Shown: positions 13,388 through 27,803, counted from the first letter of the whole stretch. The stretch: 63,994 bases of DNA, filler included, from Neoconidiobolus thromboides FSU 785 (GCA_025603075.1; 7 parts of 7 records of this genome joined end to end with filler, not necessarily neighbours in it); one strand, 5' to 3'. The notes: generated from the letters alone by a model not told the origin. Program-made: numbers and translations.

Positions 13388-13550
13388 CACTATATATACT
13401 CCTTGATTACAATATATAATTGTGAGTAAATATTGATTTGGTTTTATGGTATATATCTCAAATTAAGTTCAATAATTAGCCTCGTTTGTAACTTAATTTA
13501 CATTAACAACACATGGTAGATATGACACATTGTTGTTGATTAAATAATAT
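13388..13550 (-). promoter_or_regulatory. Third copy of the HWP-peptide upstream region (TATA plus upstream block) pointing into the gap
   Basis: CACTATATATACT, TACAATATATAATTGT and GTTTGTAACTTAATTTACATTAACAACACATG match 18168-18325 in order and spacing. Confidence 0.6.
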
Positions 13551-13720
13551 TTGAAATATATTAACAATATAATACTTTTATTAACCATCCTTTATTTGAA
13601 CTTTTTACGATTTTATTCTTCAAAGGTCTAAATAGAAGAGCTATATTCCATAAATTATTGTGTACCCCTTTTAAAAATACTAAAATTTTTAGTGTCTATT
13701 TACTTTTATAAATATTATAT

Positions 13721-13807
13721 GGGGATGTATTTTAAAAGTTTTATTAACAATCTTTCTGTTCAAATGGTGCTTAAAAATGGAAAAAATGAAATCAAAAAAG
13801 TATCCCC
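13721..13807 (+). mobile_element. MITE copy (87 bp, small internal deletion), TSD ATAT
   Basis: GGGGATGTAT...TATCCCC with ATAT flanks. Confidence 0.85.
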
Positions 13808-14339
13808 ATATAACGCACCTTTTAACTAATAAATTGAAATAATCATTACATCGGGTACTTTTATTCATAACTTATCATCATGTTATTACGATAAAATAAC
13901 CATAAAGTCAATTAAATAGGTTTTTATCTTGTTGATGTCATTACAAAATATACAATATTTAATTGTTTATTGGTTATTATTATTATTTTATTTTTATTTT
14001 CAACTTTAGATATCCATATAAAACAAGTAAATAAACATTTTAGATGACATTACAATAAATGTGAAAATATCTTTAATACATACTTATAAATAGACTAAAA
14101 ATAAACAAATTAAATTAAAGTGCAGTCTAACAATAAATAAATCAGGGATACCATTATATTGAATCCCTTTAAAATTTAACTCATTTTGGGATTTGGCTTT
14201 TGTGAGCAAACTTGTTAAGTAAATGTACTAAATAAAATGATGTCCAAAAAAAGCTTGAATAATATACTAGCTATTTTCATAAAAAGGCTTTCTAATATAA
14301 AAACTAGATAGCCTATACCTTTGAAATTAAAATTGTGGA

Positions 14340-14760: not shown

Positions 14761-14849
14761 ATACTTATACAAAGAAAAATACTAATCAGTCTGATAAAAT
14801 TTGTTTTTTAGCATTTGGAGGTCACTTTAGGAAATTTAGCAAGTCTATT

Positions 14850-14944
14850 GGGACGTTTTTTTCGGCTTCATTGCTTTTTCCATTTTTCAAGCGCTATTTG
14901 AGTGAAAGGACTGTTAGAATTCTTGAGTATAAAAATATATTTTT
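14850..14944 (-). mobile_element. MITE copy (right TIR eroded CCCC>TTTT)
   Basis: Consensus match incl. AAGCGCTATTTGAGTG. Confidence 0.8.
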
Positions 14945-15439
14945 ATATATAAAAAGTGATACGAAGAAGCCTATTTAATTTTGTAAAAAAAATTATGTCT
15001 ATAGCATTTTTAAATATCAATATGTTTAAAGACTTACTAAGAACTTGAAATTGTATCTAGTAATACTAATATGATGGGAGTTTTTAAAACCTTTTGACAT
15101 AAGAACTTCATACCAGTTTTTAAAGTTCATTCAACAATTGCTTTTGGAATAAGTATTTATTGATTTTTTCCAAAAAGCACAATTTAATGTACAAATATAT
15201 CTGAAACTCTTATTTTATTTAAAACTTAACTAGTACTTTATTTTAGTTTTAGACTATAAAAAATGGACAAGATAAAAAAAGCATTCTCATATTTTATAAA
15301 ATAATTAATAGCTTGAAAGCAATAACAAAAATTTATTAAAAAAGTAAAAAGTAAAGAAACGAAGCCAAGATGTTTGGGTCATACTTGCATCTATGGGTCT
15401 ATTAAAATCTTATTTAAAAGTACTTTTGACAGCATGAAA

Positions 15440-16966
15440 TTATAGTATTCTAGCTATTTTTATAATCAATCCTATAATTTTTGTGGTGCTATTTTCAATT
15501 CCATAAAAATGTTTAAACAAATTCAAATCATCCATGTAGAGGGATATATTTTTTGTTCAAGAACTCTACTAATAACCTTTCCACTCAAATAACTCTTACA
15601 AATGGAAAAATTAAAGCGGAAAAAACATTACCATGTCTTTAACGCCAAATGATGGGTCCTCTGATTTAATAAAATAGGCCCAATTGTGATACTTAGGGGC
15701 CTCTTTTTTTAGTTTAAATTTATAAAATGCATATAGCACGGCTCTTATCATTAATATAAGTTCATTTAGTCCTCTTATGACACCCACTTGTTAATGCTTT
15801 ATCGTTTCTATCATTTATATTTGTAGTAATATATACGTTTTATTATTCTTATTATTGTTAGTACCAATATCAATATTTGCATTAATCCCTTGGGTTAATG
15901 GTGTACCTTTAACTTCATCCCATTTAGCAATATCCAATACTTGAGTTCCATCTGGACTTTCTACATTAAATTTATATTCAGAATAAACATAGCTAATAGA
16001 TTTTTTGCCAAAAGAATTAATTATGTATTTAATAGAGTTAGAAAAACATTTCTAATTTCTAAAATTAAAACCTTTTTTATAATAGTAATTTTAGATGTTT
16101 TTATATTAATTCTGAAACATCTCGAGATATGTTATAGTCCTCCATATTTCTATCACATGTCATGAAGTATACCAACTCACCCAATTTTAGAATAGTTTCA
16201 TAAGTTAATACATCTAGGATGTTTTTTGAATTGTAGGTTTTGACTTTGTTTTTATATTGAACTCATACAATATAATATAATTAACGTTATGGTTGATTTT
16301 TTCCACTTTATCTTCAAAATAATAAATTCTGTTATTTAAAATAAATGGATCTGTATAAAATCTACTCCTTGAATTTTCTATGATAAATTTTGTTTTTATG
16401 AATGTTAAAGAACAATAGTGGAAGTGATAATATACTCTATAATTTATAACTGTATAAATGTGAGATTATATAAAATCGCTTTTGATTGCTATCACTTTGC
16501 GAAATTTTATGATGTAGCTTACAATCTGTTGTGTTTTTATCTTTATAATCAATATTACGAATTAAGTTTTTGACTATTCATTCTTTTACTATTGGTTTTT
16601 CTAAACATTATGATAGCAATAACTCAACCTATGGCTTATACTACTACAAAAATTTATAATAAATTTACTATCTTTAATTTCAATATAAGAAGTAAATGAG
16701 GCTAAAATATGCTCTGATTAATTGATAGTATTATTTCTTTCCCATAGGGCTATATTGATACTTAATTTAAAACCTTTCTTCAAATCTAATTTAAACACTT
16801 CTTTGTTGAGAGGCACTTTTTTATCCACTGAACCTTTTTTATCAATAATACCGCCTAGATAATACAATACACCATCGATTACTATGCATTCATCATCACT
16901 AGTTTGTGGTAAGATTTTGTTAACCTTACATAATAATAATAAAATAAAAAGCAGGTGAATTATCAT
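15440..16966 (-). pseudogene. Decayed Kelch-like type I membrane protein gene, paralog-like to 23161-24285, interrupted by a MITE
   Basis: N-terminal ECIVIDGVLYYLGG...VFKLDLK resembles SCLVVDDALYYMQG...IYQLNLK; downstream fragments YGG, QVLDIAKW and a TM-like GVIRGLNELILMIRAVLYAFYKFK; multiple stops and frameshifts. Confidence 0.6.
15538..15632 (+). mobile_element. MITE copy, TSD ATGT, inside Kelch-like pseudogene
   Basis: ATGT on both sides; removal restores the minus-strand frame FGVKDMDDLNLF. Confidence 0.82.
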
Positions 16967-17983
16967 AGTTAATAAATATGAAAAGTAAAATCGTAATCGG
17001 TTTTTAATGTTCATATTATTATTGTTATTAAATTGCATTAATTTATTGGCAAGTTTTATTGAATTAATTACTTATTTATTGATATCCATTATATAACATA
17101 CTCCCAAGTATAATCCTTATAGTCAATTTTTTTATGTAAAAGTGTAAACTTCAAATAGTTTATTTCTAAAAGTAAAAAGTAAAAAGTAAAAAATTTAAAT
17201 GATTAGTTTAAAAGATGCATATATCAATAGATATATTCTACAAAGGTTGAAATTGGAATCTATATTTGTATATTTTTTGAAAAAGAGAAATGGTGAAATA
17301 AGATCTGTTCTGCTTTTGTCTTTCAGAATGATACCTATTGAGATAGCAGAAGGTAGGAATTAAAAAGCGTGAGCTATCAATTCAAGATATCGTATTTAAC
17401 GATTTTAAAGCTCTTATAAAGGATCCGCAGATCAATAGCAACAATGGGTTCTCCAAATTTATCATTTTGTCAATCAAATCAATAAACTTTCTAGACGAGT
17501 GACATAATAAATAATAGTTATATAATACAATCAACCAGCATATAGATTTAAGATGTATTTAATAGTCTATCTACGACCCTAAAAGAAAGGAAAGATTTAA
17601 ATGAGTAACAAAGCGTCAAAAATAGAAATAGAAATAAATCAAATAATAACAACAATACCAGCAAAATGATCGATATAGTGTATGTAACTCGGCTTCTGTA
17701 ATACATATACTTCATAGGATTAATAGTTCATTATAAAAGTAAAATGAAGAAAATTAGCCAATCAATCTAATCATTTTCTCCATGATATGAAAACATCAAA
17801 TAAATTTAAAAAGATAAGATCACATTAAATATTACAATTTTTTTAATAAAGCAAGAAGCGTTTGTACTATCACTGATAATAGATAGAGATTGGAATAAAA
17901 ATATGCTTTAAAAAAATTAATATTATGTTTAATTATTTATAAAGAAATAACTTTTAATAATAGTCTGATATTTAATCTAAAAT

Positions 17984-18109
17984 CTAAGGCCAATGAGGGT
18001 GAGTTCCAAGATGAGAGGCATTACTAGAAGCTGGTTGGTTGTTGACTGGGACTGAAGTGATTGTGGGCATGATGTAAACAGTATAAACGATGATAAAAGT
18101 AAGCTGCAT
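17984..18109 (-). CDS. 41-aa secreted peptide precursor HWP-1 (MQLTFIIVYTVYIMPTITSVPVNNQPASSNASHLGTHPHWP)
   Basis: Hand-translated intact ATG-TAG ORF below the ORF-track cut-off; hydrophobic N-terminus; same length and clear paralogy to 27678-27803; TATA box upstream. Confidence 0.8.
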   Translation of the reverse strand: MQLTFIIVYTVYIMPTITSVPVNNQPASSNASHLGTHPHWP

Positions 18110-20039
18110 TGCGTTTATAACAATTTGTATCTAATCTAATTTAATTTTATAGAATGGTAAAGTTACTCTATTTATACTTTTCAAAAAATACAATATAATT
18201 GTATTATAAATGCTTGGTAGGTTGTTACCAGGGGCGAATCAATTCAAACTTTAAAAAATGACTTGTTTGTAACTTGATTTATATTGATGACACATGCTAT
18301 ACACTGTACGTTGCCGTTGACCAAATACCATACTTGATTTACATTTGTAATATAGCGTTTTTGTTACTTATCCTTAATTTAAACATTTTACATCTATATT
18401 TTATAACTATCTGACTAAAAAAAGTTGCTTTTTCGTATTTTATACACCCTTTCAATAAATATATTTGGAATCTAGACTTATTCAACTTCGTAAGTATCTA
18501 TCCTATATTTATTGACTTATAGAGACAAAGTAGTAGCGGTTTTGTATTACCTTTTATTGATTACTAATCTTTGCGTTATTGCTAGAAACAGTATGTAATA
18601 ATATTTAGTGTTGTAAAATATTCAGCTACTAGTAGCTTACTGGTTTAAACTATTGGTTATATAGTGTTTAATTTTATTATTTATTATTGCTTGACATCAC
18701 TATCTATTTTATAAAGTTAAACAACTTTTAGCTCTAGTAACGGCAAAATTGGTAAATGGTATAGATATTGGAGTCAAAAAAATTAGACATAAATATACCA
18801 AATATAATCAATATGTGATCTGATATAAGATCACATCTCCAATAAAATTGAATCCTTTTAAAATTTAACTTGATTTAGAATTTGACTCTTATGAACAAAT
18901 TTGTGAAGTTTACTAAACTCAACAATGCTAACCACAAAAAACTAGTATAATATATTTGCTTTTATTGTAAAAATGCTGTAACCTATTTAAACCAATAAAT
19001 AACTTGGGTCTTTAGGACTGATGTCATGAAGAATAAAGCTTCATTTAAAGTAATGAACTTAGTTAAGATGACTGATGCAACTCTAATGACATGGCACTAA
19101 CAACAAAGAACATTTAAAAATACTTCAAGCCTTTCTTTAACAAAACATATAGCTGAAATATGTTATTGGGCAAGTTATACAGATTCTTCAAGTCTTATTT
19201 CATATAGATAAAAACGACTATGGCAACTTTTAAATAGAATGATGCAAACCCATACCTGTAGTAAAACGTTTATTATACTTTAACTCCTTATAAATAGTTT
19301 TTTCTAGTATTTTAAAAATGTACTTAGTTTATCCCTATTTAAACTAATTTTATGAATTATACCCCTTTATTTTTTATCCTTTTACTCTATTGATATAATT
19401 AACGAACCACAATCGGAGTACATCTACTCATAGTAATTCAGATGGTATAATATTGTTACATATCCAAGTTCATACAATATAAAGTATTATCTATTTAAAT
19501 AAAATGTGGTTTTTAAATGTCAAAGGAGTTGCAATTTTCAAACAAATCAGAAATAAATGGTAATATTTACAGTTGTTTCATCTCTTTTCAAAAAAGTTTA
19601 CTCCAAAATAAGCTATGCAATTGTATACAAAGCGAAATGAAACATAATTAAAATTTGATATTTTATTTTATTTTATTTTTAATAATGATAATTGAAAGTA
19701 AAGATTAAATTCTATTAACAGCACCAAACTTAAGCTAAATATTTAATTTCTCTATTTTTGTCTTTTACCCAACCCTTTAGTGTAGTTTTTATATTATCAA
19801 TAATATAATGGTATTTAAATAATAGCGATATAACACAGCCAGTTTAGAAACAACTATTATTATTTTATTATTCAGATATGTGTCTTAGTTACTTTCTATA
19901 AAGATATACTTTTTTAATATTCCTGAAAGAGCGAACTCCTAAGTGGTTCATTTAAGTATAATTATTCAACAAAAGAAGGTAATATAGTAGAGCAAATATT
20001 TGAGAACGTCTTAGCCTTTTTTATTAGAGTAAAAGCAGA

Positions 20040-20340
20040 CTACTGGATATGAGAAGTGGCAGAGGAAAGCTCAGCATAGTACCTATAAACAACCAGATGA
20101 TTGAGCAGCAGAAACTAGCTATAAACTTCTCATTTAGTTGAGGGAGAGACAACAATATGTCTTGAATATTAGAGCAGCGCAAATGACAACCATAGCTTCA
20201 AGTAAGTAAATACCCATACCAGACTGAAGAAATGACAGGATAGGCAAAGAAACGATGTTGAATACTATCTTCTAATAAGCCATAAAATCAGCATTCAGGG
20301 GCTATCTCTGGTTTATATTTGTGAGTTTCCACTCTAGTCA
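20040..20340 (-). mobile_element. Relic of non-LTR (L1/Tx1-like) ORF2 C-terminal CCHC zinc-finger region
   Basis: Minus strand reads PEC*FYGLLEDSIQHRFFAYPVISSVW...IIWLF, matching C-x2-C-x7/8-H-x4-C-x6-W with two TGT>TAT changes; GC above background. Confidence 0.5.
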
Positions 20341-20560
20341 AAAAGAAGTTATTGATTAAGCCCCACATGATAGGTTGATATTAAAATATATATTTTTTAA
20401 ATCAACATTTATTTAATCAAATAACTTAGGTATCATATAAAATTACCTTTTATATTATGGTTATAAGAACTAATAAATCCAAAAAAGCGCATGTTAAATG
20501 GTTCTATAAGGCATGCTATAAAAACAAACAAAATTAAAAGTTAAGCCTTTTTTTACTACA

Positions 20561-21466
20561 ATGAAATTAGGTTTTCATGGAGCTTTCATTGTCAGCTTCG
20601 CTAATACAATATCAATTACTGCCATATCGTTTTCACTTATATTATGTATATGTATTTCAATTGTCAATAAAGAAATCAATCAATCAATCACATATCGTAT
20701 TTCTATTTTAATAGCTACAGGTGATTTGCTTTACAATATTGGAGGTCTAATAAAGCTCCTTCCAATAGTCTATACAAATTCACATTTATGTTATTTCTCT
20801 CAATCTGCCAATACTTTTGGGTTCTCAATTTCAGTGTATTACTCGATAGTAATAGCTATACTTTATCTTTTAAATATTGTGTACGAATATAAAGTTAGAA
20901 AGGTGATAAAATACATTATATATATAGTACCGTTTATATTATCAATTCTTTCCTGCATATTACCAATAATATTCAAGAAAATTGATACGGATAATGAATG
21001 CTCATATTATGATGACCTTGATGGAGACTTATGGTTAGCTTTTTGCAATAGTATTTCAATGGTTATTGCAATAATAGTGATACCTGTGATATATATTATA
21101 ATAGCCAATTTTTTTGTCAGAAAAACAATGAGAAAAAAGTCAAATTTGAGTTCAAGTGCCCAAAAGCAAAGTAATCACTCAGCTTTATCAAGGCTACTTA
21201 GCTACTCTCTACTCCCAATTATAACCCACTCTTTGATGATATTTTTGGTATTTTTTGTGTTGTCTGAAAAAATGATAGATAACACAATATTTAAAATTTT
21301 GAAGATCAGTAGCGTTTTTCTCATTGGGTTACAGGGCCTATTAAATTCCATTTTGCTTTTAACTAACTCAATATTAATTAAAGAATTAAATAATGCCTAC
21401 GACAAGATATTTGGATTGAAAGAACTGGATGACCCTTATAGAATAGGCAGATTTTGTAAAATATAG
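20561..21466 (+). CDS. 7TM GPCR-like protein (cAMP-receptor-like/Git3-like)
   Basis: About seven hydrophobic segments; IATGDLLY (TM2), Cys before TM3 and in ECL2, LLSYSLLPII (TM6), LQGLLNSI (TM7). Confidence 0.75.
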   Translation: MKLGFHGAFIVSFANTISITAISFSLILCICISIVNKEINQSITYRISILIATGDLLYNIGGLIKLLPIVYTNSHLCYFSQSANTFGFSISVYYSIVIAILYLLNIVYEYKVRKVIKYIIYIVPFILSILSCILPIIFKKIDTDNECSYYDDLDGDLWLAFCNSISMVIAIIVIPVIYIIIANFFVRKTMRKKSNLSSSAQKQSNHSALSRLLSYSLLPIITHSLMIFLVFFVLSEKMIDNTIFKILKISSVFLIGLQGLLNSILLLTNSILIKELNNAYDKIFGLKELDDPYRIGRFCKI

Positions 21467-21682
21467 TGTTAGCTCTAAAATCCAAGTCCAGACCAAAAGC
21501 ATGAGGAAATAGAATAGTTTAGAAGTACATCAGTTTTATCAAATTTTATTTTCATACCTGTAGTATTAAGGATACAAGCTGCCGGTTAAACACAGAATCA
21601 ATCCCTATATAATACAAACTTCTCAATAAAGCCTACCTTACCAAACATTTAATAAAATACGTTAATCTGATCTAAAATATAT

Positions 21683-21779
21683 AAGGGTGTTTTTTTATCT
21701 CATCACTTTTTCCATTTTTTAAGCACGATTCGAGTGGAAAAGCTACCAGTAAAATTCTTAAACAAAAAAATATATCTTT
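21683..21779 (-). mobile_element. MITE copy, TSD ATAT
   Basis: Consensus match; eroded TIRs. Confidence 0.8.
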
Positions 21780-22084
21780 ATATTTTTTAGCTATTTCTAA
21801 AATGACCATGTATGTCTAAATATTATAGACATTAAAATCATTCAATGGTCGATAATTTTTTTTATGGTATTATTATATCGTAAACTCATATCTTTATAAG
21901 ACTAATAAAGAATGCTAAAAAGTTTTTAATTTAATTTTCAGCTTCTAATTTAGTTGAGCAAAGCCTTTATAGAACTTAGATTTTTTTTTATTAACAGTGG
22001 TCATTATCAGTTGGAAGATTAAAAGAGTGTTTTGGTTGTATGGTGGTTTTTAATCAAACTTTTTGGGCAAATACATTTATATAT

Positions 22085-22177
22085 AGGGATGTTTTTTTAT
22101 TCCATCACTTTTTCTATCTTAAGCACTATTTGAGTGAAAAAATTGCTAGCAAAATTTTTAACACAAAATACAGCCCT
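22085..22177 (-). mobile_element. MITE copy, TSD ATAT
   Basis: Consensus match; ATAT flanks. Confidence 0.82.
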
Positions 22178-23160
22178 ATATATATTAATAGTTCCAAAAA
22201 AGAATACAGAACTCTAACAAACAAAGAAAACCACTCCTAGAATTATAGCAAATTATACATCTTGTTTGTTAAAATTCTATTTTCAAATATTTTAAAACCT
22301 AGTGAAAAACCTGATCACACAAAATATACCTAATAGAATTGTTGTTATTTATTTATTTTTTACAGAAACCATTTCATCCTTAGACGTAAAAAATGTTTAT
22401 ATTATAGTCAACTGCTTTTGATATGATTATAGTCAAAAAGTTATATTATTTCGAAACTAACCATATAAACAGAAAGTTCGAATTTCTACTAGCTGCAGCT
22501 ATATACCATTATATTTGTAAATTTGCCCAAAAAAGTGATGGAACTTAGAAACCCAGCATTTTCGAGTATTTCTTTATTTGGAAATTGTATCTAGGACTCC
22601 TAAGTTTGTAGAATATTTCATAAATATGATGAATGATAGAAATTTGTTTGAATGGCCGTATAATGGTGTATTATAACAAAAGTTAATTTTCAATAAATTA
22701 ACAAACTTTTAAACTCATGGGATGCAAATTTTATTATAGAAGTGAATAATGGACTATTTATCTACTAATACTCTCAACATAATAATATATGAAACATAAT
22801 TTCTCAAACTAGCTCTCCTTTTTCTTGTAACTCCCTTTACTTTACTTTGGGATATTTCACTTTAAAGCTGATTTTATTTATTATTTATAAACGTAACTAC
22901 CCTATTTACTACAAACTTTAAGGCAATAACTAACATAATTAAAGTTTATAAATAAGACTTTTAATTAATTTATTAAATAGATTAATAAATTTGTATGCAA
23001 AATTTAAATATATTTTCATACTTCTGGTATAAAATGTTATTAGAGGGGTAACTAATATTCCCAATTTAACCAATTAATTTTAATTTTTGAAGCAGAAAAA
23101 TGTTCTATAATTTGAGTGTACTCAAAAGCTGTTATCTAAAAAAAATCTCTTTGTTTAAAA

Positions 23161-24285
23161 ATGAACTTATTTACTTCGTTTATAACAAATACCTTCTTAT
23201 GCGCTATAGGGTTAATCCAAATAATTAAAGGAGAGAGTTGCTTAGTTGTCGATGATGCTTTATATTATATGCAAGGAGAATCACTCGCTCAAAACAATCA
23301 AGGAATTCAAAATAAAACAGTTATTTACCAGTTAAATTTAAAGGATAAAGGAATGAAATGGAGAACAGTAGAAACTACAACTTTAGCACCAGCCATGAAT
23401 AATGCAGTTTCTTATTATTTGAAAGATAAAAAGACCATTATAAACTTCTATAAAAATAAAGGCATTTTAGATACATCTTATTTTAATCTTGAGAAAAAAA
23501 TATGGGAATTAAAATCAGAGGATTCTACCATTTTAGGTTCCTCAAAGGGAAGTAGATCCAACGAACTAAATAAAACTAGTAACATCAATATGAAGGTAAT
23601 ACAAAGCGATATGAATGCGAATCAATTTGTGTATCTCCAAATGTACTCGACAGATGATTTATCTTTAATCAAAAAACTTAATATCGATGGAATTACGATT
23701 ATTATAACTGATATGCTAAGCGGAAAAACCACTAAAGCAACCATTAATGTACCCAACTTTATAAGTCCAGAAGCCTTTATGTTCAATGGGAAATTATTTT
23801 TAATGGGTGGCTACGATTTAAATGAAACAAAATTTAAAAACAATATAGTAACTGAGATCAACCTTGATACTTTAAGTGGAACTACCCATAAATTGAAAGG
23901 GAAGATACCAGACTCGGAGCAAAATTTCAAACTTTTAACGGCTGACAATTTGGTTTATTTCATTGAAAAAGGAACCGTGGACTCAAATGTAGTTTATGAA
24001 TTAGATTTGAAAACGTTTACATTCAAAATCAAGTTAAACAAGTTTAAAATTAACGTTGATGGATGTTTAGCTTATTATAATAATAACATTATATCTCTAA
24101 TCAGCGAAAATAGCTCTGAGGATCTTCATTTTTTCAACACTGGTACTTGGATGCTCGAAAACCAATTTCCAAGTTTAAAATCTTTCTTAAAAAGCGAAAA
24201 AACAGGTTCATCAGGTCTTAAACTAAACCATAGCAAAATGATGTTGCTATATGGGATTATCGTGGGAGTATTATTCTTATTTTAA
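23161..24285 (+). CDS. Secreted Kelch/beta-propeller-like protein with C-terminal hydrophobic anchor (GPI or TM)
   Basis: Signal-like N-terminus, KLFLMGGYD Kelch-like motif, repeated YxLDLKT..W/F strands, C-terminal MMLLYGIIVGVLFLF. Confidence 0.6.
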   Translation: MNLFTSFITNTFLCAIGLIQIIKGESCLVVDDALYYMQGESLAQNNQGIQNKTVIYQLNLKDKGMKWRTVETTTLAPAMNNAVSYYLKDKKTIINFYKNKGILDTSYFNLEKKIWELKSEDSTILGSSKGSRSNELNKTSNINMKVIQSDMNANQFVYLQMYSTDDLSLIKKLNIDGITIIITDMLSGKTTKATINVPNFISPEAFMFNGKLFLMGGYDLNETKFKNNIVTEINLDTLSGTTHKLKGKIPDSEQNFKLLTADNLVYFIEKGTVDSNVVYELDLKTFTFKIKLNKFKINVDGCLAYYNNNIISLISENSSEDLHFFNTGTWMLENQFPSLKSFLKSEKTGSSGLKLNHSKMMLLYGIIVGVLFLF

Positions 24286-24613
24286 TTAATGACTTTTTCA
24301 TATCATAATAAAGTATAGTACCTAATTTACATATGCGATAAGCTAATAATTTTTTTGGTTTTTAAAAAAATGAAAGTATTTGATGTGGAGATGTTTGATT
24401 TTGGAAATTGTCCATTTTTTATTTAATATAGATACTAAAAAACATTTTATCGAGTGTTACTAATTGGGCAAGTCCAAAATTAATTTTGAACCATTTTAGA
24501 ATTTAAAGTTTTATAAATTTGCTCAAAAATTTTCAGGAATACTACAATACGTTCTAAAAGTATTTGAACTGATTTAACATTCAATATAAAAAACAATTGA
24601 GTGGATTTAATGT

Positions 24614-25336
24614 TTATTGTGAAATAGTACTAAAGTTAGGAAATGGGAATTCTTTTTCTACATCAGTAAAATTATCAATACTTGGATCCTGTACCCAGTT
24701 ATATTCATTGCACTTAGAAATTTTCATAGCTGTATCTAAATCGTAGACCTTGCTAATTAAATAGAAAACCCCATCTAATCCAGCAGTAGCACCTGAAGAA
24801 GTTATGAACTTACCATCATGAACAAATCTAGCTTGGCGTTGCCATTGGACATTTGGATATTTAGCAGCGCTAATACTAAAGAGTCCTTTAGTGATAGTAG
24901 CTTTTTTATTGTCTAATAAACCTGCTGCAGCTAAGCATTCGCTTCCTTGACAAACACTGAAGAAGAACTTATTTACTTTATCACTAACACGATTTAAATA
25001 ATCACTTAGTTCTTTACTTGGACCTGAGCCAGCAGCTAAAGTAAGGATATCTATATCGATATCCTCATCAAAAGAATGATCTGGGATTATAGTAATACCA
25101 TCAAAAGTTTTAATAGGTTCTTTGGTCTTAGCTATTGTCTTAATACGTGATTTTGGTATAAAAGATAGCATGGTGCATGCAATAGAGAAATCAAAAGTAT
25201 CTAAACCATTGTCAATTACTGCGACCACATTGAGTTCTTTATCAGGCATGGGAATTTTGAACCATGTACTACTAAATTGGTCCTTTTGCTCTAAAGTAAA
25301 GCTGCTATAATCTGGGGTTTCTTTATTCTGAGTCAT
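24614..25336 (-). CDS. DJ-1/PfpI (ThiJ) family protein, isonitrile-hydratase-like subtype
   Basis: SVCQG nucleophile elbow, LAAAGLLDNKKAT, RFVHDGKFITSSGATAGLD. Confidence 0.88.
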   Translation of the reverse strand: MTQNKETPDYSSFTLEQKDQFSSTWFKIPMPDKELNVVAVIDNGLDTFDFSIACTMLSFIPKSRIKTIAKTKEPIKTFDGITIIPDHSFDEDIDIDILTLAAGSGPSKELSDYLNRVSDKVNKFFFSVCQGSECLAAAGLLDNKKATITKGLFSISAAKYPNVQWQRQARFVHDGKFITSSGATAGLDGVFYLISKVYDLDTAMKISKCNEYNWVQDPSIDNFTDVEKEFPFPNFSTISQ

Positions 25337-27677
25337 ATTTATTATTTTTAATTTTTAGTTTGGATGTCTGCGCACTCTTTGCTTATATAGTTTTTGATGA
25401 TTCAGCCATTGTCAAACCATTTACAAAGCTGATAATAATTTTAAGTTGAAGCGATGTGTATAATCTAATTTAAAAATAATCTATGGATAATCTATAAAAG
25501 GAAAGTTTCTAGAAACTTTTAAATATTATTATATCTAAGGTCATCGGACTTCAAGAAGAAAATGTATTGTTGTACCTACTAGATACCTTGCTGATTAAAA
25601 CTATTTTTAGATTTAGTTTATTAGCTATCTTATGTAGTATGTTGCTATATTTAATCTACTAAAAGCCAAAATCTAAAGGTGATAAGTCTAATAATACTTA
25701 AACATAAGGCTCAACTCGTTTTCCGATTTTAATTTGCATTTTTTTCCGAGGTTATTTATTACAAATTAGTTGGCTTATATTTTTTATTGGAAAGAAATGA
25801 TTTGGCAGGAAATAAAAGTAGTTCATGTTTCTAACAGCCATTTACAAGATGTCTGGTAGCCATGCAAAATATAAAAAAAAATTTGATCAAAAAAACACAC
25901 AGTTGAAGCATTCTACTATTTAAAAATTAAACACTTACTTTTAGATTTAACTCATAAAAAATTTCAACTTGTTTAAAAAGTTTAGAGCAAACTAGATTTC
26001 AAATGAGTCTATGGTCTTAGATACAATACAACCCATCTTGTTTTTCTACATCTTTTTTAATATGTATTTACTATTACTTAAACACTATCAAGTTTCATAA
26101 GAAATAAAATATTACAAAGTAAAAATAAGTTACTAATCGATGATTTATATACACTACCATTTTATTTTTTTAAATTAGCTTAAATTTATCATCTCTATAC
26201 TTCTAATACTAATAAAACATTTAGGATTTATACCCTTTTCAGTATTTCAAAAAATACTACCCATTAAAAATAGTTCATTTTCATTGATTATGATTCAAAG
26301 TAATCAAAGTCAAATAATTGATCAATAAAAAAATAGAACTTATAAGATAATGATACTTTTGAATCTTTGTACATCAGCAAAAAAGTTCCTAGATGAATTA
26401 AGATCAATTAAAGGCCTAAAAGTAAATAATTCTTATAAACATATTAATGGTATAATAATGATTGGTATCAATCAGTATAAAATTAATCTAGAAATTGTAT
26501 AATAGTTAACTTTAAAGCCGTCTTTATTTAGTTACACTTTTTCTTTATTAAGCGATAAATTAATCCCATGTATGTAACTGGTATAACTGTTATGGGAGAA
26601 AATACAAATTTGAAAGTATATATTATTAATCAACATGTTCTACCGCTTTTAATTTTTTAATATCGATTAGAAAATGTTAACTTTTCCAAAGTAAATGAAC
26701 AATCAATTACCACTTAAATCATAAATACAAATAAAATTTTATACTACACGATTTTACTTCTAAAAATGTAAGTCATCTATTTTCCTATGGTGATAATGTG
26801 CTTGGAAATATCAATATATCATACCGTTTTTTTGTGGGTAGATTATTGAATTTAGTAGATTTTTTGACAAATTTGCACAGAGATGTTAAATTCTAAATTG
26901 AGTTAAATTTCAAAGGGAATCAATTTTATTAAAAACCGGATTTGCTCATTAAACTCTGTATATTAGTTATATTTGGTATATTCAATTTTAATATTTTAAA
27001 ATTTGATGTTAAGAGTTTTTCACACTAATACTCAAATACTAGTAAAGTAATTTATAAAATCAAATTAAAAGTTGAATAAACTTATAAAACATAAGGTAAC
27101 TTGAAAATAATAATAACCAATATAAAACTAATTTCATATAGCGTATAGACCAATAACAACCATCGATAGTTGAATGATTTATTGTTTGGTATGACCATCT
27201 ATGATATTTTTCGATAAAGATATAAACTTAAATAGTAAGTAAAAAGTACTCTGAGAAGTTTATAATTTTCTCTTTATTAGTTAAGAAATCCGCGATAAAA
27301 TATTCAAAAATTAAGTAGACTCTAGGCTTTAAAAATACTTGTTAATAGGGTGTATAATAATACAATCAAACCAATTTTTTGGAAAATTATTAAGCATGAT
27401 CGTAAAAAGTTTAAATTAAGAATAACAAAAGTATTTTGATATAAATACAATCTGACATTTACTCAGCCAACGACAGTATATTATAATACACCATGTGTTA
27501 CCTATACATTTAAGTTATAAACAAACCGGTCCATTAACCTTAAAATAATACATCCGTGTTATCAACTCATTTAACGTTTATAATATCATTACATACTATT
27601 AACAAGAAGTATAAATAGTGGTGGTTTTATCATACTATATAATTATATTACATTAGATACAAATTACTATATACAAA

Positions 27678-27803
27678 ATGCAACTTACTTTCCTTATCGC
27701 TTACACTGTTTACATTATGTCTGTAATCACTTCAGTTCCTACTAATAACCAACCAGCTGCTGATAAACCCAAAGCAATTGAAATCCGTCGTCACTGGCCT
27801 TAA
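27678..27803 (+). CDS. 41-aa secreted peptide precursor HWP-2 (MQLTFLIAYTVYIMSVITSVPTNNQPAADKPKAIEIRRHWP)
   Basis: Hand-translated intact ATG-TAA ORF; hydrophobic N-terminus; RR before terminal HWP; GTATAAATAG about 70 nt upstream; paralog of 17984-18109. Confidence 0.82.
   Translation: MQLTFLIAYTVYIMSVITSVPTNNQPAADKPKAIEIRRHWP

What the first reader, a model, noticed from the sequence alone, without database searches (positions are those of the whole stretch)
17984..27803. Unannotated family of 41-aa secreted micro-proteins ending in an invariant HWP
Seen: two intact ORFs below the 60-aa cut-off. They are MQLTFIIVYTVYIMPTITSVPVNNQPASSNASHLGTHP-HWP (17984-18109, minus) and MQLTFLIAYTVYIMSVITSVPTNNQPAADKPKAIEIRR-HWP (27678-27803, plus). 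Length is identical, the signal region and the terminal HWP+stop are conserved, the middle has diverged, and about 220 bp of promoter is homologous. Established: Kex2 cleaves after RR/KR. Inference: HWP-2 could release the tripeptide HWP, while HWP-1 lacks the dibasic site and would give a longer form. A conserved C-terminus with a variable spacer is typical of signalling-peptide or pheromone precursors. I do not recognise this family.
Basis: partly seen in the sequence, partly recalled or inferred. Interest (0 to 1): 0.8.

Follow-up and report, generated by a model that had tools for sequence, protein, structure and literature searches.

The report
Transcribed 41-aa secreted-peptide micro-gene family
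Two tiny unannotated genes in a Conidiobolus-like fungus are real: one is demonstrably transcribed, and both encode 41-residue peptides with a likely secretion signal, a fast-evolving middle and a shared HWP end, but their function is unknown and the "HWP tripeptide pheromone" idea is unsupported.

Summary
Both 41-codon ORFs exist as described.

They are genes, not chance ORFs:
- **Promoter:** a conserved TATAAATAG lies 67-68 nt upstream of each ATG.
- **Transcript:** for copy 1, RNA-library contigs from three runs in two studies cover only 17858-18142, unspliced, with silent flanks. The 5' end lies 34 nt after the TATA box.
- **Selection:** codons 1-27 give dN 0.12 against dS 0.89. The 11-codon middle gives dN 1.2 against dS 0.52. 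HWP and the stop differ only synonymously.
- **Intactness:** the CDS has no indel, whereas the flanks carry about 2 indel events per 100 nt. ORF GC is 39-43% against 22-25% in the flanks.

Homology extends about 930 bp upstream, not 220 bp. A third promoter copy is cut off by the left contig end, so the cluster holds at least three genes.

No homologue was found anywhere.

My best reading is a lineage-specific, locally amplified family of small secreted linear peptides. The secretion signal is inferred only. "Invariant HWP" rests on two sequences. Kex2 release of HWP fits only one copy. A pheromone role is speculation.

The parts
17984..18109 (-). HWP-1 coding sequence: 41 codons plus TAG
   Evidence: Translation. 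It starts at the first ATG of the transcript. GC is 43% against 22-25% in the flanks.
17858..18142 (-). HWP-1 transcript: about 285 nt, unspliced, with a 33-nt 5' UTR and a roughly 125-nt 3' UTR
   Evidence: RNA-library contigs X5 17860-18142, X6 17858-18125 and X7 17969-18119. RNA depth is zero from about 17482 to 17850 and from about 18179 to 18600. No joints.
18168..18176 (-). TATA box (TATAAATAG) of HWP-1, 67 nt before the ATG and 34 nt before the observed RNA 5' end
   Evidence: Sequence. It is conserved in copy 2 and, as TATATATAG, in the third copy.
18177..18977 (-). Upstream region of HWP-1, homologous to the upstream regions of copy 2 and of the third copy
   Evidence: Alignments A1 and A3. 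blastn gives 18026-18466 against 27331-27761, 18777-18956 against 26813-26997, and 18262-18391 against 13481-13608. The only runs of 7 or more bases identical in all three copies are at 18290-18296 (CATGTGT), 18861-18870 and 18911-18917.
27678..27803 (+). HWP-2 coding sequence: 41 codons plus TAA. It is the only copy with a dibasic R37-R38 before HWP.
   Evidence: Translation. GC is 39%. The contig ends 10 nt after the stop. Its transcription was not tested.
27610..27618 (+). TATA box (TATAAATAG) of HWP-2, 68 nt before the ATG
26813..27609 (+). Upstream region of HWP-2, inverted homologue of the HWP-1 upstream region
   Evidence: (I1, I3, I4, I5, I7).
13388..14289 (-). Third copy of the family's promoter region. 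Its TATATATAG is at 13390-13398, and the contig's left end cuts it off 2 nt later, so the gene itself lies off the contig.
   Evidence: Three-way alignment A3. blastn gives 13481-13608 against 18262-18391 and 14158-14289 against 18847-18977. It is 57-60% identical to the other two promoters, about as far as they are from each other.

Best explanation
HWP-1 and HWP-2 are real, independently transcribed, intronless micro-genes. They belong to a locally amplified, lineage-specific family with at least three copies on this 14.4-kb contig of a Conidiobolus-like entomophthoralean fungus.

Shown:
- Each complete copy has its own TATA promoter.
- Copy 1 gives a roughly 285-nt RNA whose first ATG opens the 41-codon ORF.
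- The protein sequence of residues 1-27 and the terminal HWP is held by purifying selection.
- An 11-residue segment (residues 28-38) has diverged faster than neutral DNA with its length kept.

Inferred:
- Residues 1-19 act as a cleavable signal peptide: a hydrophobic core at residues 3-14, then P or S, then T-I-T-S, with cleavage before V-P.
- A pre-peptide this short would enter the ER after translation.
- Cleavage would leave a cysteine-free, linear 22-residue peptide with a conserved V-P-x-N-N-Q-P-A head, a hypervariable centre and an H-W-P tail.
- Proline next to the N-terminus and at the C-terminus would shield both ends from exopeptidases.
- The peptide then acts outside the cell as a ligand or effector whose variable centre is under diversifying selection.

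Kex2 cleavage before HWP is possible for copy 2 only and is not a family mechanism.
For: - **ORFs and their conservation pattern:**
- **Transcription:** three RNA-library runs from two studies cover only 17858-18142, with silent flanks in the same call and no splice joints. The 5' end is 34 nt downstream of the TATA box.
- **Coding signature:** dN/dS is about 0.14 in codons 1-27 and about 2.3 in codons 28-38. The H codon and the stop codon differ synonymously. Third-position differences are in excess, p = 0.027.
- **Intactness:** no indel in the CDS against 17 indel events in 838 aligned upstream nt. The chance of a same-length intact ORF under flank-rate substitution is 2-5%.
- **Composition:** ORF GC is 39-43% against 22-25% in the flanks.
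- **Signal-like N-terminus:** the Kyte-Doolittle mean is 2.0-2.4 over residues 5-13, small residues sit at -1 and -3 around S19, and there is no proline at +1.
- **Third copy:** a third promoter copy lies at the contig edge.
- **Not a known RNA:** no Rfam family or tRNA in the piece.
- **Context:** lineage-specific small secreted proteins without Pfam matches are abundant in Entomophthoromycotina (PMC9391592).
Against: - No signal-peptide predictor could be run. The n-region has no basic residue, and the 19-residue hydropathy mean (1.6-1.7) is borderline for a membrane span.
- Translation and secretion are not shown.
- Only two complete sequences exist, so dN/dS and 'conserved HWP' rest on tiny samples.
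- No homologue was found in any other genome or metagenome, so there is no evolutionary depth.
- Transcription of copy 2 was not tested because read laying is capped at one call.
- The RNA contigs carry no strand. The minus-strand assignment rests on the TATA position and on the absence of any plus-strand ORF of 25 aa or more from an ATG (35 aa or more from GTG/TTG) in that stretch.
Confidence: 0.55

Rival explanations
1. The genes encode small single-pass membrane micro-proteins. The N-terminal hydrophobic stretch (residues 3-20) is an uncleaved anchor, and the 21-residue polar tail stays attached, as in 40-aa proteolipids or regulatory micropeptides.
For: The 19-residue hydropathy mean of 1.58-1.70 sits at the usual membrane-span threshold. 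Exact residues in positions 9-14 and 17-21 are conserved more tightly than a generic signal peptide needs. Copy 2 carries K/R only after the hydrophobic stretch.
Against: The uninterrupted hydrophobic core is only 12 residues long. It is followed by P or S and a small-polar T-I-T-S motif, which is typical of a cleavage region. Housekeeping micro-membrane proteins are usually single-copy and conserved across fungi. Here there is local amplification, a hypervariable segment and no homologue.
Confidence: 0.2
2. The genes encode a peptide-pheromone or RiPP-type precursor. Processing by Kex2 after R-R in copy 2, or by a prolyl peptidase after P38 or P26 in copy 1, would release a short HWP-ended peptide. 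That peptide would be sensed by a receptor, perhaps the orphan 7TM protein encoded between the copies.
For: The layout is a conserved head and tail around a variable segment. Prolines sit at 26 and 41 in both copies, and R-R precedes HWP in copy 2. Short precursor genes in opposite orientation flank a GPCR-like 7-helix gene at 20561-21466. This recalls basidiomycete pheromone/receptor loci (my knowledge).
Against: Copy 1 has no dibasic site. There are no repeats and no CaaX. No processing-enzyme gene lies on the contig. The 7TM protein hits neither the STE2 nor the STE3 Pfam model at E up to 1. Its model is of low confidence, pLDDT 47, and matches GPCRs only generically. The 20-kb locus around its only homologue, in Neoconidiobolus thromboides, holds no HWP-like ORF. 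The faster-than-neutral middle argues against a mere spacer.
Confidence: 0.1
3. The two ORFs are chance ORFs or a non-coding transcript. A duplicated TATA-driven non-coding RNA happens to keep an open frame.
For: The ORF is very short. The TATA-to-ATG region is as conserved as codons 1-27, at 79% each. Nothing shows that a protein is made.
Against: The joint probability of keeping the start, frame, length and stop at flank rates is about 0.002-0.004. Differences are in excess at third positions, and dN/dS is 0.14 in codons 1-27. GC is raised only in the ORF. There is no Rfam match.
Confidence: 0.07

Closest known systems
Lineage-specific fungal small secreted proteins or peptides (SSPs) of zygomycetes
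   Same: It has an N-terminal signal-like segment and no Pfam domain. It is restricted to a narrow lineage, and it shows local gene duplication and fast divergence. PMC9391592 reports that most SSP groups of Entomophthoromycotina lack Pfam matches and are shared by only a few species.
   Different: It is far shorter (41 aa) than the gene models normally called, and neither ORF sequence is in the protein collection searched. It has no cysteines. A fixed-length hypervariable 11-mer sits between a conserved head and an HWP tail.
Basidiomycete pheromone/receptor (P/R) loci (mfa/phb-type precursors beside an STE3-type receptor)
   Same: Precursor genes of about 40 codons occur in several copies and in opposite orientations beside a 7-helix receptor-like gene. 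The comparison rests on my knowledge.
   Different: There is no C-terminal CaaX. A hydrophobic N-terminus is present. The 7TM protein does not match the STE3 or STE2 Pfam models.
Alpha-factor-type prepro-pheromones and Kex2-processed repeat proteins
   Same: A signal-like N-terminus is present, and in copy 2 a dibasic R-R sits directly before the conserved end.
   Different: There is a single unit with no repeats. The dibasic site is absent from copy 1. The precursor is several times shorter.
Amanita MSDIN cyclic-peptide precursors
   Same: It is a multi-copy family of 33-41-aa precursors with a conserved leader. A hypervariable core is bounded by invariant prolines (P26 and P41 here).
   Different: MSDIN precursors have no hydrophobic signal and need a conserved follower peptide after the core. 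Here the chain ends at the proline. No prolyl oligopeptidase gene lies on the contig.
Conotoxin-style gene superfamilies (conserved signal, hypervariable mature peptide)
   Same: The signal region is under purifying selection and the mature segment shows dN > dS.
   Different: There are no cysteines and no pro-region. Here the synonymous sites of the signal region have diverged (dS 0.89), so conservation is at the protein level, not the DNA level.

Membership tests
Eukaryotic secretory pre-peptide (cleavable signal peptide) | An N-terminal hydrophobic h-region of 7-15 residues, followed by a polar c-region with small residues at -1 and -3 | tested here: met
   The hydrophobic core spans residues 3-14, followed by P or S at 15 and then T-I-T-S. 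Candidate cleavage sites follow T18 or S19, with no proline at +1. This is a heuristic only; SignalP was not available.
Eukaryotic secretory pre-peptide (cleavable signal peptide) | A positively charged n-region | tested here: not met
   The n-region is only M-Q, with no K or R. This feature is common but not obligatory. The neighbouring Kelch protein's signal-like N-terminus also lacks one.
Eukaryotic secretory pre-peptide (cleavable signal peptide) | The mature peptide is found outside the cell | not testable with these tools
   This needs secretome peptidomics.
Kex2-processed pheromone or KEP precursors | A dibasic (KR/RR) site before each mature unit in all family members | tested here: not met
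   R37-R38 occurs only in copy 2. Copy 1 has H37-P38.
Kex2-processed pheromone or KEP precursors | Tandem repeats of the mature peptide | tested here: not met
   There is a single unit of 41 aa with no internal repeat.
Basidiomycete lipopeptide pheromone precursors with an STE3 receptor | A C-terminal CaaX motif | tested here: not met
   The C-terminus is H-W-P and the peptide has no cysteine.
Basidiomycete lipopeptide pheromone precursors with an STE3 receptor | The adjacent receptor belongs to the STE3 (PF02076) or STE2 (PF02116) family | tested here: not met
   A Pfam scan of 20561-21466 at E up to 1 lists neither family. Foldseek on a low-confidence model gives only generic GPCR matches, TM about 0.45-0.54.
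MSDIN-type RiPP precursors | A conserved follower peptide after the core, and an associated POPB-type prolyl oligopeptidase | tested here: not met
   The chain ends at P41. The contig's genes are a 7TM protein, a Kelch protein and a DJ-1/PfpI protein. The rest of the genome could not be searched.
Any described protein family (Pfam) or any protein in the public collections searched | Significant sequence similarity | tested here: not met
   - No Pfam hit at or near any family's curated cut-off; the only listing is a 12-bit, E 0.19 match of copy 2 to a phage holin model.
- No candidate in the word search of 5.8 billion clusters.
- The HMM search of 1.84 billion representatives gave one hit, a repetitive 374-aa artefact.
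- The metagenome scan confirmed none of 167 pattern matches.
- The best ESM Atlas score was 0.85, to unnamed clusters.

The most novel reading that the evidence does not exclude
The HWP genes are precursors of secreted peptide ligands for the orphan GPCR-like 7-helix protein encoded between them. That would make this a peptide/receptor (pheromone-like or self-recognition) locus in Entomophthoromycotina, a lineage where no peptide pheromone system has been described to my knowledge. The hypervariable 11-mer would set specificity, and the HWP tail would serve as the common receptor or processing handle.
Probability: 0.07. Interest if true: 0.85.

Novelty: new member of a known kind. Interest (0 to 1): 0.45.

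Why it matters
Gene callers and secretome surveys skip ORFs of this size, so families like this one are invisible in current catalogues of early-diverging fungi. Here there is a concrete case with promoter, transcript and selection evidence. It lies in a genus that includes insect pathogens and opportunistic pathogens of mammals.

A cysteine-free, proline-capped 22-mer with a diversifying centre is cheap to synthesise and test, whether as a signal, an antimicrobial or a host-directed effector. If the link to the neighbouring 7TM gene were real, it would open the question of peptide signalling in zygomycete fungi. As it stands, the finding is a well-supported orphan micro-gene family of unknown function.

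Tried and rejected
- **Homologue searches, all blank.** These were the exact look-up, the word-indexed search with the two-sequence alignment, Pfam, ESM Atlas, the HMM search over 1.84 billion representatives (whose sole hit P0004 is a translated repeat), and the metagenome pattern scan.
- **Synteny.** tblastn and an ORF scan of the 20.9-kb Neoconidiobolus thromboides locus around the 7TM homologue found nothing.
- **Reaching other contigs of this genome.** I tried paralogues of the Kelch protein, but none exist in the collection. Family size in the genome therefore stays unknown.
- **First exon of a longer gene.** Rejected. The RNA contigs show no joints and end about 125 nt after the stop.
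- **Known non-coding RNA.** Rejected.
- **More copies on the contig.** A sensitive blastn of the copy 1 transcript found only copy 2.
- **Insect adipokinetic hormone mimic.** Residues 2-5 (Q-L-T-F) match the start of insect adipokinetic hormones. I treat this as coincidence: the residues sit inside the hydrophobic signal directly after Met, with no Trp at position 8 and no amidation signal.
- **Bacterial promoter/terminator scan**: not applicable to a eukaryote.
- **Structure of the 7TM protein.** The model was too weak (pLDDT 47) to assign a GPCR class.
Full report
**Observation.**
- 25 of 41 residues are identical.
- Positions 1-27 share 22 of 27, positions 28-38 share 0 of 11, and H-W-P is shared.
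- The piece is one complete public contig of 14,426 bp with 26% GC.
- The only informative homologue of a neighbouring gene is a hypothetical protein of Neoconidiobolus thromboides FSU 785 at 41% identity.

**Are the ORFs genes?** Several independent lines say yes.
- *Promoter.* A TATAAATAG lies 67 nt (copy 1, 18168-18176) and 68 nt (copy 2, 27610-27618) upstream of the ATG. The stretch from TATA to ATG is 79% identical between the copies, against 55-65% further upstream.
- *Transcript.* Contigs from three RNA-library runs in two studies were laid on 17400-18600. They cover only 17860-18142, 17858-18125 and 17969-18119.
  - No joints were found, and depth is zero over the remaining flanks apart from an unrelated piece left of 17457.
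  - The silent flanks act as the control against DNA carry-over.
  - The 5' end at 18142 lies 34 nt downstream of the TATA box. The two longest contigs end within 2 nt of each other, about 125 nt past the stop.
  - The ORF's ATG is the first in this RNA. Plus-strand ORFs were sought down to 25 aa from an ATG and 35 aa from GTG/TTG, and none lies in the stretch.
  - This excludes the 'first exon of a longer gene' reading.
- *Selection.* In codons 1-27, dN is 0.12 and dS is 0.89. In codons 28-38, dN is 1.2 and dS is 0.52. The His codon (CAT/CAC) and the stop (TAG/TAA) differ only synonymously. In codons 1-27, 10 of 17 differences sit at third positions (p = 0.027).
- *Intactness.*
  - The upstream alignment has 17 indel events in 838 aligned nt and 36% mismatches.
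  - At those rates 2.6 indel events would be expected in the ORF, and none is seen (P about 0.08).
  - Only 2-5% of simulated copies keep the start, frame and stop.
- *Composition.* ORF GC is 43% and 39%, against 22-25% in the flanks and 29-34% in the three larger genes.
- *Not a known RNA.* No Rfam family or tRNA lies in the piece.

**Extent of the duplication and a third copy.**
- Homology between the two loci runs about 930 bp upstream of the ATG, not about 220 bp.
- A third copy of this upstream region lies at the left end of the contig (13388 to about 14289, minus strand). It has its own TATATATAG at 13390-13398, and the contig ends 2 nt later. The third gene must lie just off the contig.
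- The three promoters are about equally distant from each other (57-62% identity), so these are old paralogues, not a recent duplication.
- The layout is two same-strand copies about 4.7 kb apart. A third, inverted copy lies about 9.5 kb further on. Three genes sit between copy 1 and copy 2.
- The contig is bounded on both sides by family members.
- In another strain's DNA assembly graph, a 53-nt unitig (17971-18023) covers the end of the CDS plus 13 nt of 3' UTR. Its depth is 36.8, against 21-25 on either side.
- I read both facts as hints (inference) that further copies sharing segments exist in the genome.

**What the product looks like.**
- The N-terminus has a 12-residue hydrophobic core (residues 3-14). 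It is followed by P in the window, or S in copy 2 and in the other strains' copy 1 (18067 G>A).
- Then comes T-I-T-S, followed by V-P. Small residues allow cleavage after T18 or S19.
- The n-region lacks a basic residue, and the 19-residue hydropathy mean (1.6-1.7) is borderline for a membrane span. A signal peptide is therefore the likelier reading but is not proven. SignalP was not available.
- Cleavage after S19 would give a 22-residue, cysteine-free peptide with a conserved V-P-x-N-N-Q-P-A head, the variable 11-mer and H-W-P.
- From general knowledge, X-Pro N-termini and C-terminal Pro resist most exopeptidases. Pre-peptides this short must enter the ER post-translationally.
- Copy 1 alone has an N-A-S sequon. 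Copy 2 alone has R-R before HWP.

**Interpretation.**
- The variable segment is less conserved (45% nt identity) than the non-coding flank, yet it keeps its length exactly.
- That fits a part under diversifying selection better than an inert spacer.
- Kex2 release of HWP is possible only for copy 2.
- The most economical reading is a lineage-specific family of small secreted linear peptides. That kind of gene is abundant, and mostly without Pfam matches, in Entomophthoromycotina (PMC9391592). It is overlooked here because 41 codons is below gene-calling limits, and neither peptide is in the 15-billion-protein collection.
- Rivals are an uncleaved membrane micro-protein, a processed pheromone or RiPP-type precursor, and a non-coding transcript. 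The last is poorly compatible.

**Context.** Between copy 1 and copy 2 lie three genes.
- *An orphan 301-aa protein (20561-21466).* It has seven predicted helices and a cysteine pair (C77, C147) conserved in its N. thromboides homologue.
  - It is GPCR-like only in a generic sense: pLDDT is 47 and Foldseek TM is about 0.45-0.54.
  - It matches neither the STE2 nor the STE3 Pfam model.
- *A Kelch-repeat protein (23161-24285).* It has a signal-like N-terminus and a C-terminal hydrophobic tail.
- *A DJ-1/PfpI protein (24614-25336)*.

Short precursor genes flanking a 7TM gene recall basidiomycete pheromone/receptor loci. However, the defining features (CaaX, an STE3 receptor) are not met. The N. 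thromboides locus around the 7TM homologue also has no HWP-like ORF within 10 kb on either side. I keep this as a low-probability novel reading.

**Limits.**
- No homologue outside this contig could be found or reached.
- 'Invariant HWP' rests on two sequences.
- Copy 2's transcription, translation of either copy, and secretion are all untested.

**Verdict.** This is a real, transcribed, previously uncalled micro-gene family. Its secreted nature is plausible and its function is unknown. The tripeptide/pheromone mechanism is not supported.

Noticed in passing
window 20561-21466 (+): A 301-aa orphan protein with seven predicted helices. A cysteine pair (C77, C147) is conserved in its only homologue, a hypothetical protein of Neoconidiobolus thromboides FSU 785 (41% identity). 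There is no Pfam family. Foldseek on a weak model returns only GPCRs, generically. This exact ORF sequence is not in the protein collection.
   Followed up: partly
window 23161-24285 (+) and 16718-17038 (-): A 374-aa Kelch-repeat protein with a signal-like N-terminus and a C-terminal hydrophobic tail, with no homologue in the collection. The 106-aa ORF downstream of HWP-1 is weakly similar to its N-terminal part (30% over 86 aa, with the match running on past the ORF's stop to 16649), perhaps a decayed paralogue. A Kelch gene also lies 6.6 kb upstream of the 7TM homologue in N. thromboides (L001 1992-3392).
   Followed up: partly
window 21677-21767, 22079-22168, 14846-14948, 15543-15610 (inverted); also about 13716-13857: A short repeat of about 90 nt, 77-80% identical between copies and in both orientations, looks like a MITE-like element. 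About 140 nt of extra sequence in the third promoter copy, relative to the other two, shows weak similarity to it.
   Followed up: partly
window 17971-18023: In another strain's DNA assembly graph, this 53-nt piece (end of the HWP-1 CDS plus 13 nt of 3' UTR) is a separate unitig. Its depth is 36.8, against 21-25 on both sides. It looks as if another sequence in that genome shares exactly this segment.
   Followed up: no
window 18067: G>A on the plus strand in three other runs (one DNA, two RNA) changes Pro15 of HWP-1 to Ser, the residue that HWP-2 has at that position. It is the only difference inside the ORF among strains that differ at about 0.5% of sites over 1.2 kb.
   Followed up: no
window 17400-17457 and leftwards: A 179-nt RNA-library contig from run X5 ends at 17457, so another transcribed unit lies just left of the stretch that was laid. 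It was not identified.
   Followed up: no
window 24614-25336 (-): An intronless DJ-1/PfpI family gene (Pfam E 1e-13). Its nearest ESM Atlas clusters are mostly bacterial. This is a limited comparison and not evidence of gene transfer.
   Followed up: no
window 18095-18106 (-) and 27681-27692 (+): Residues 2-5 of both peptides read Q-L-T-F, the same as the first four residues of several insect adipokinetic hormones. I judge this a coincidence because they lie in the hydrophobic signal directly after Met.
   Followed up: partly
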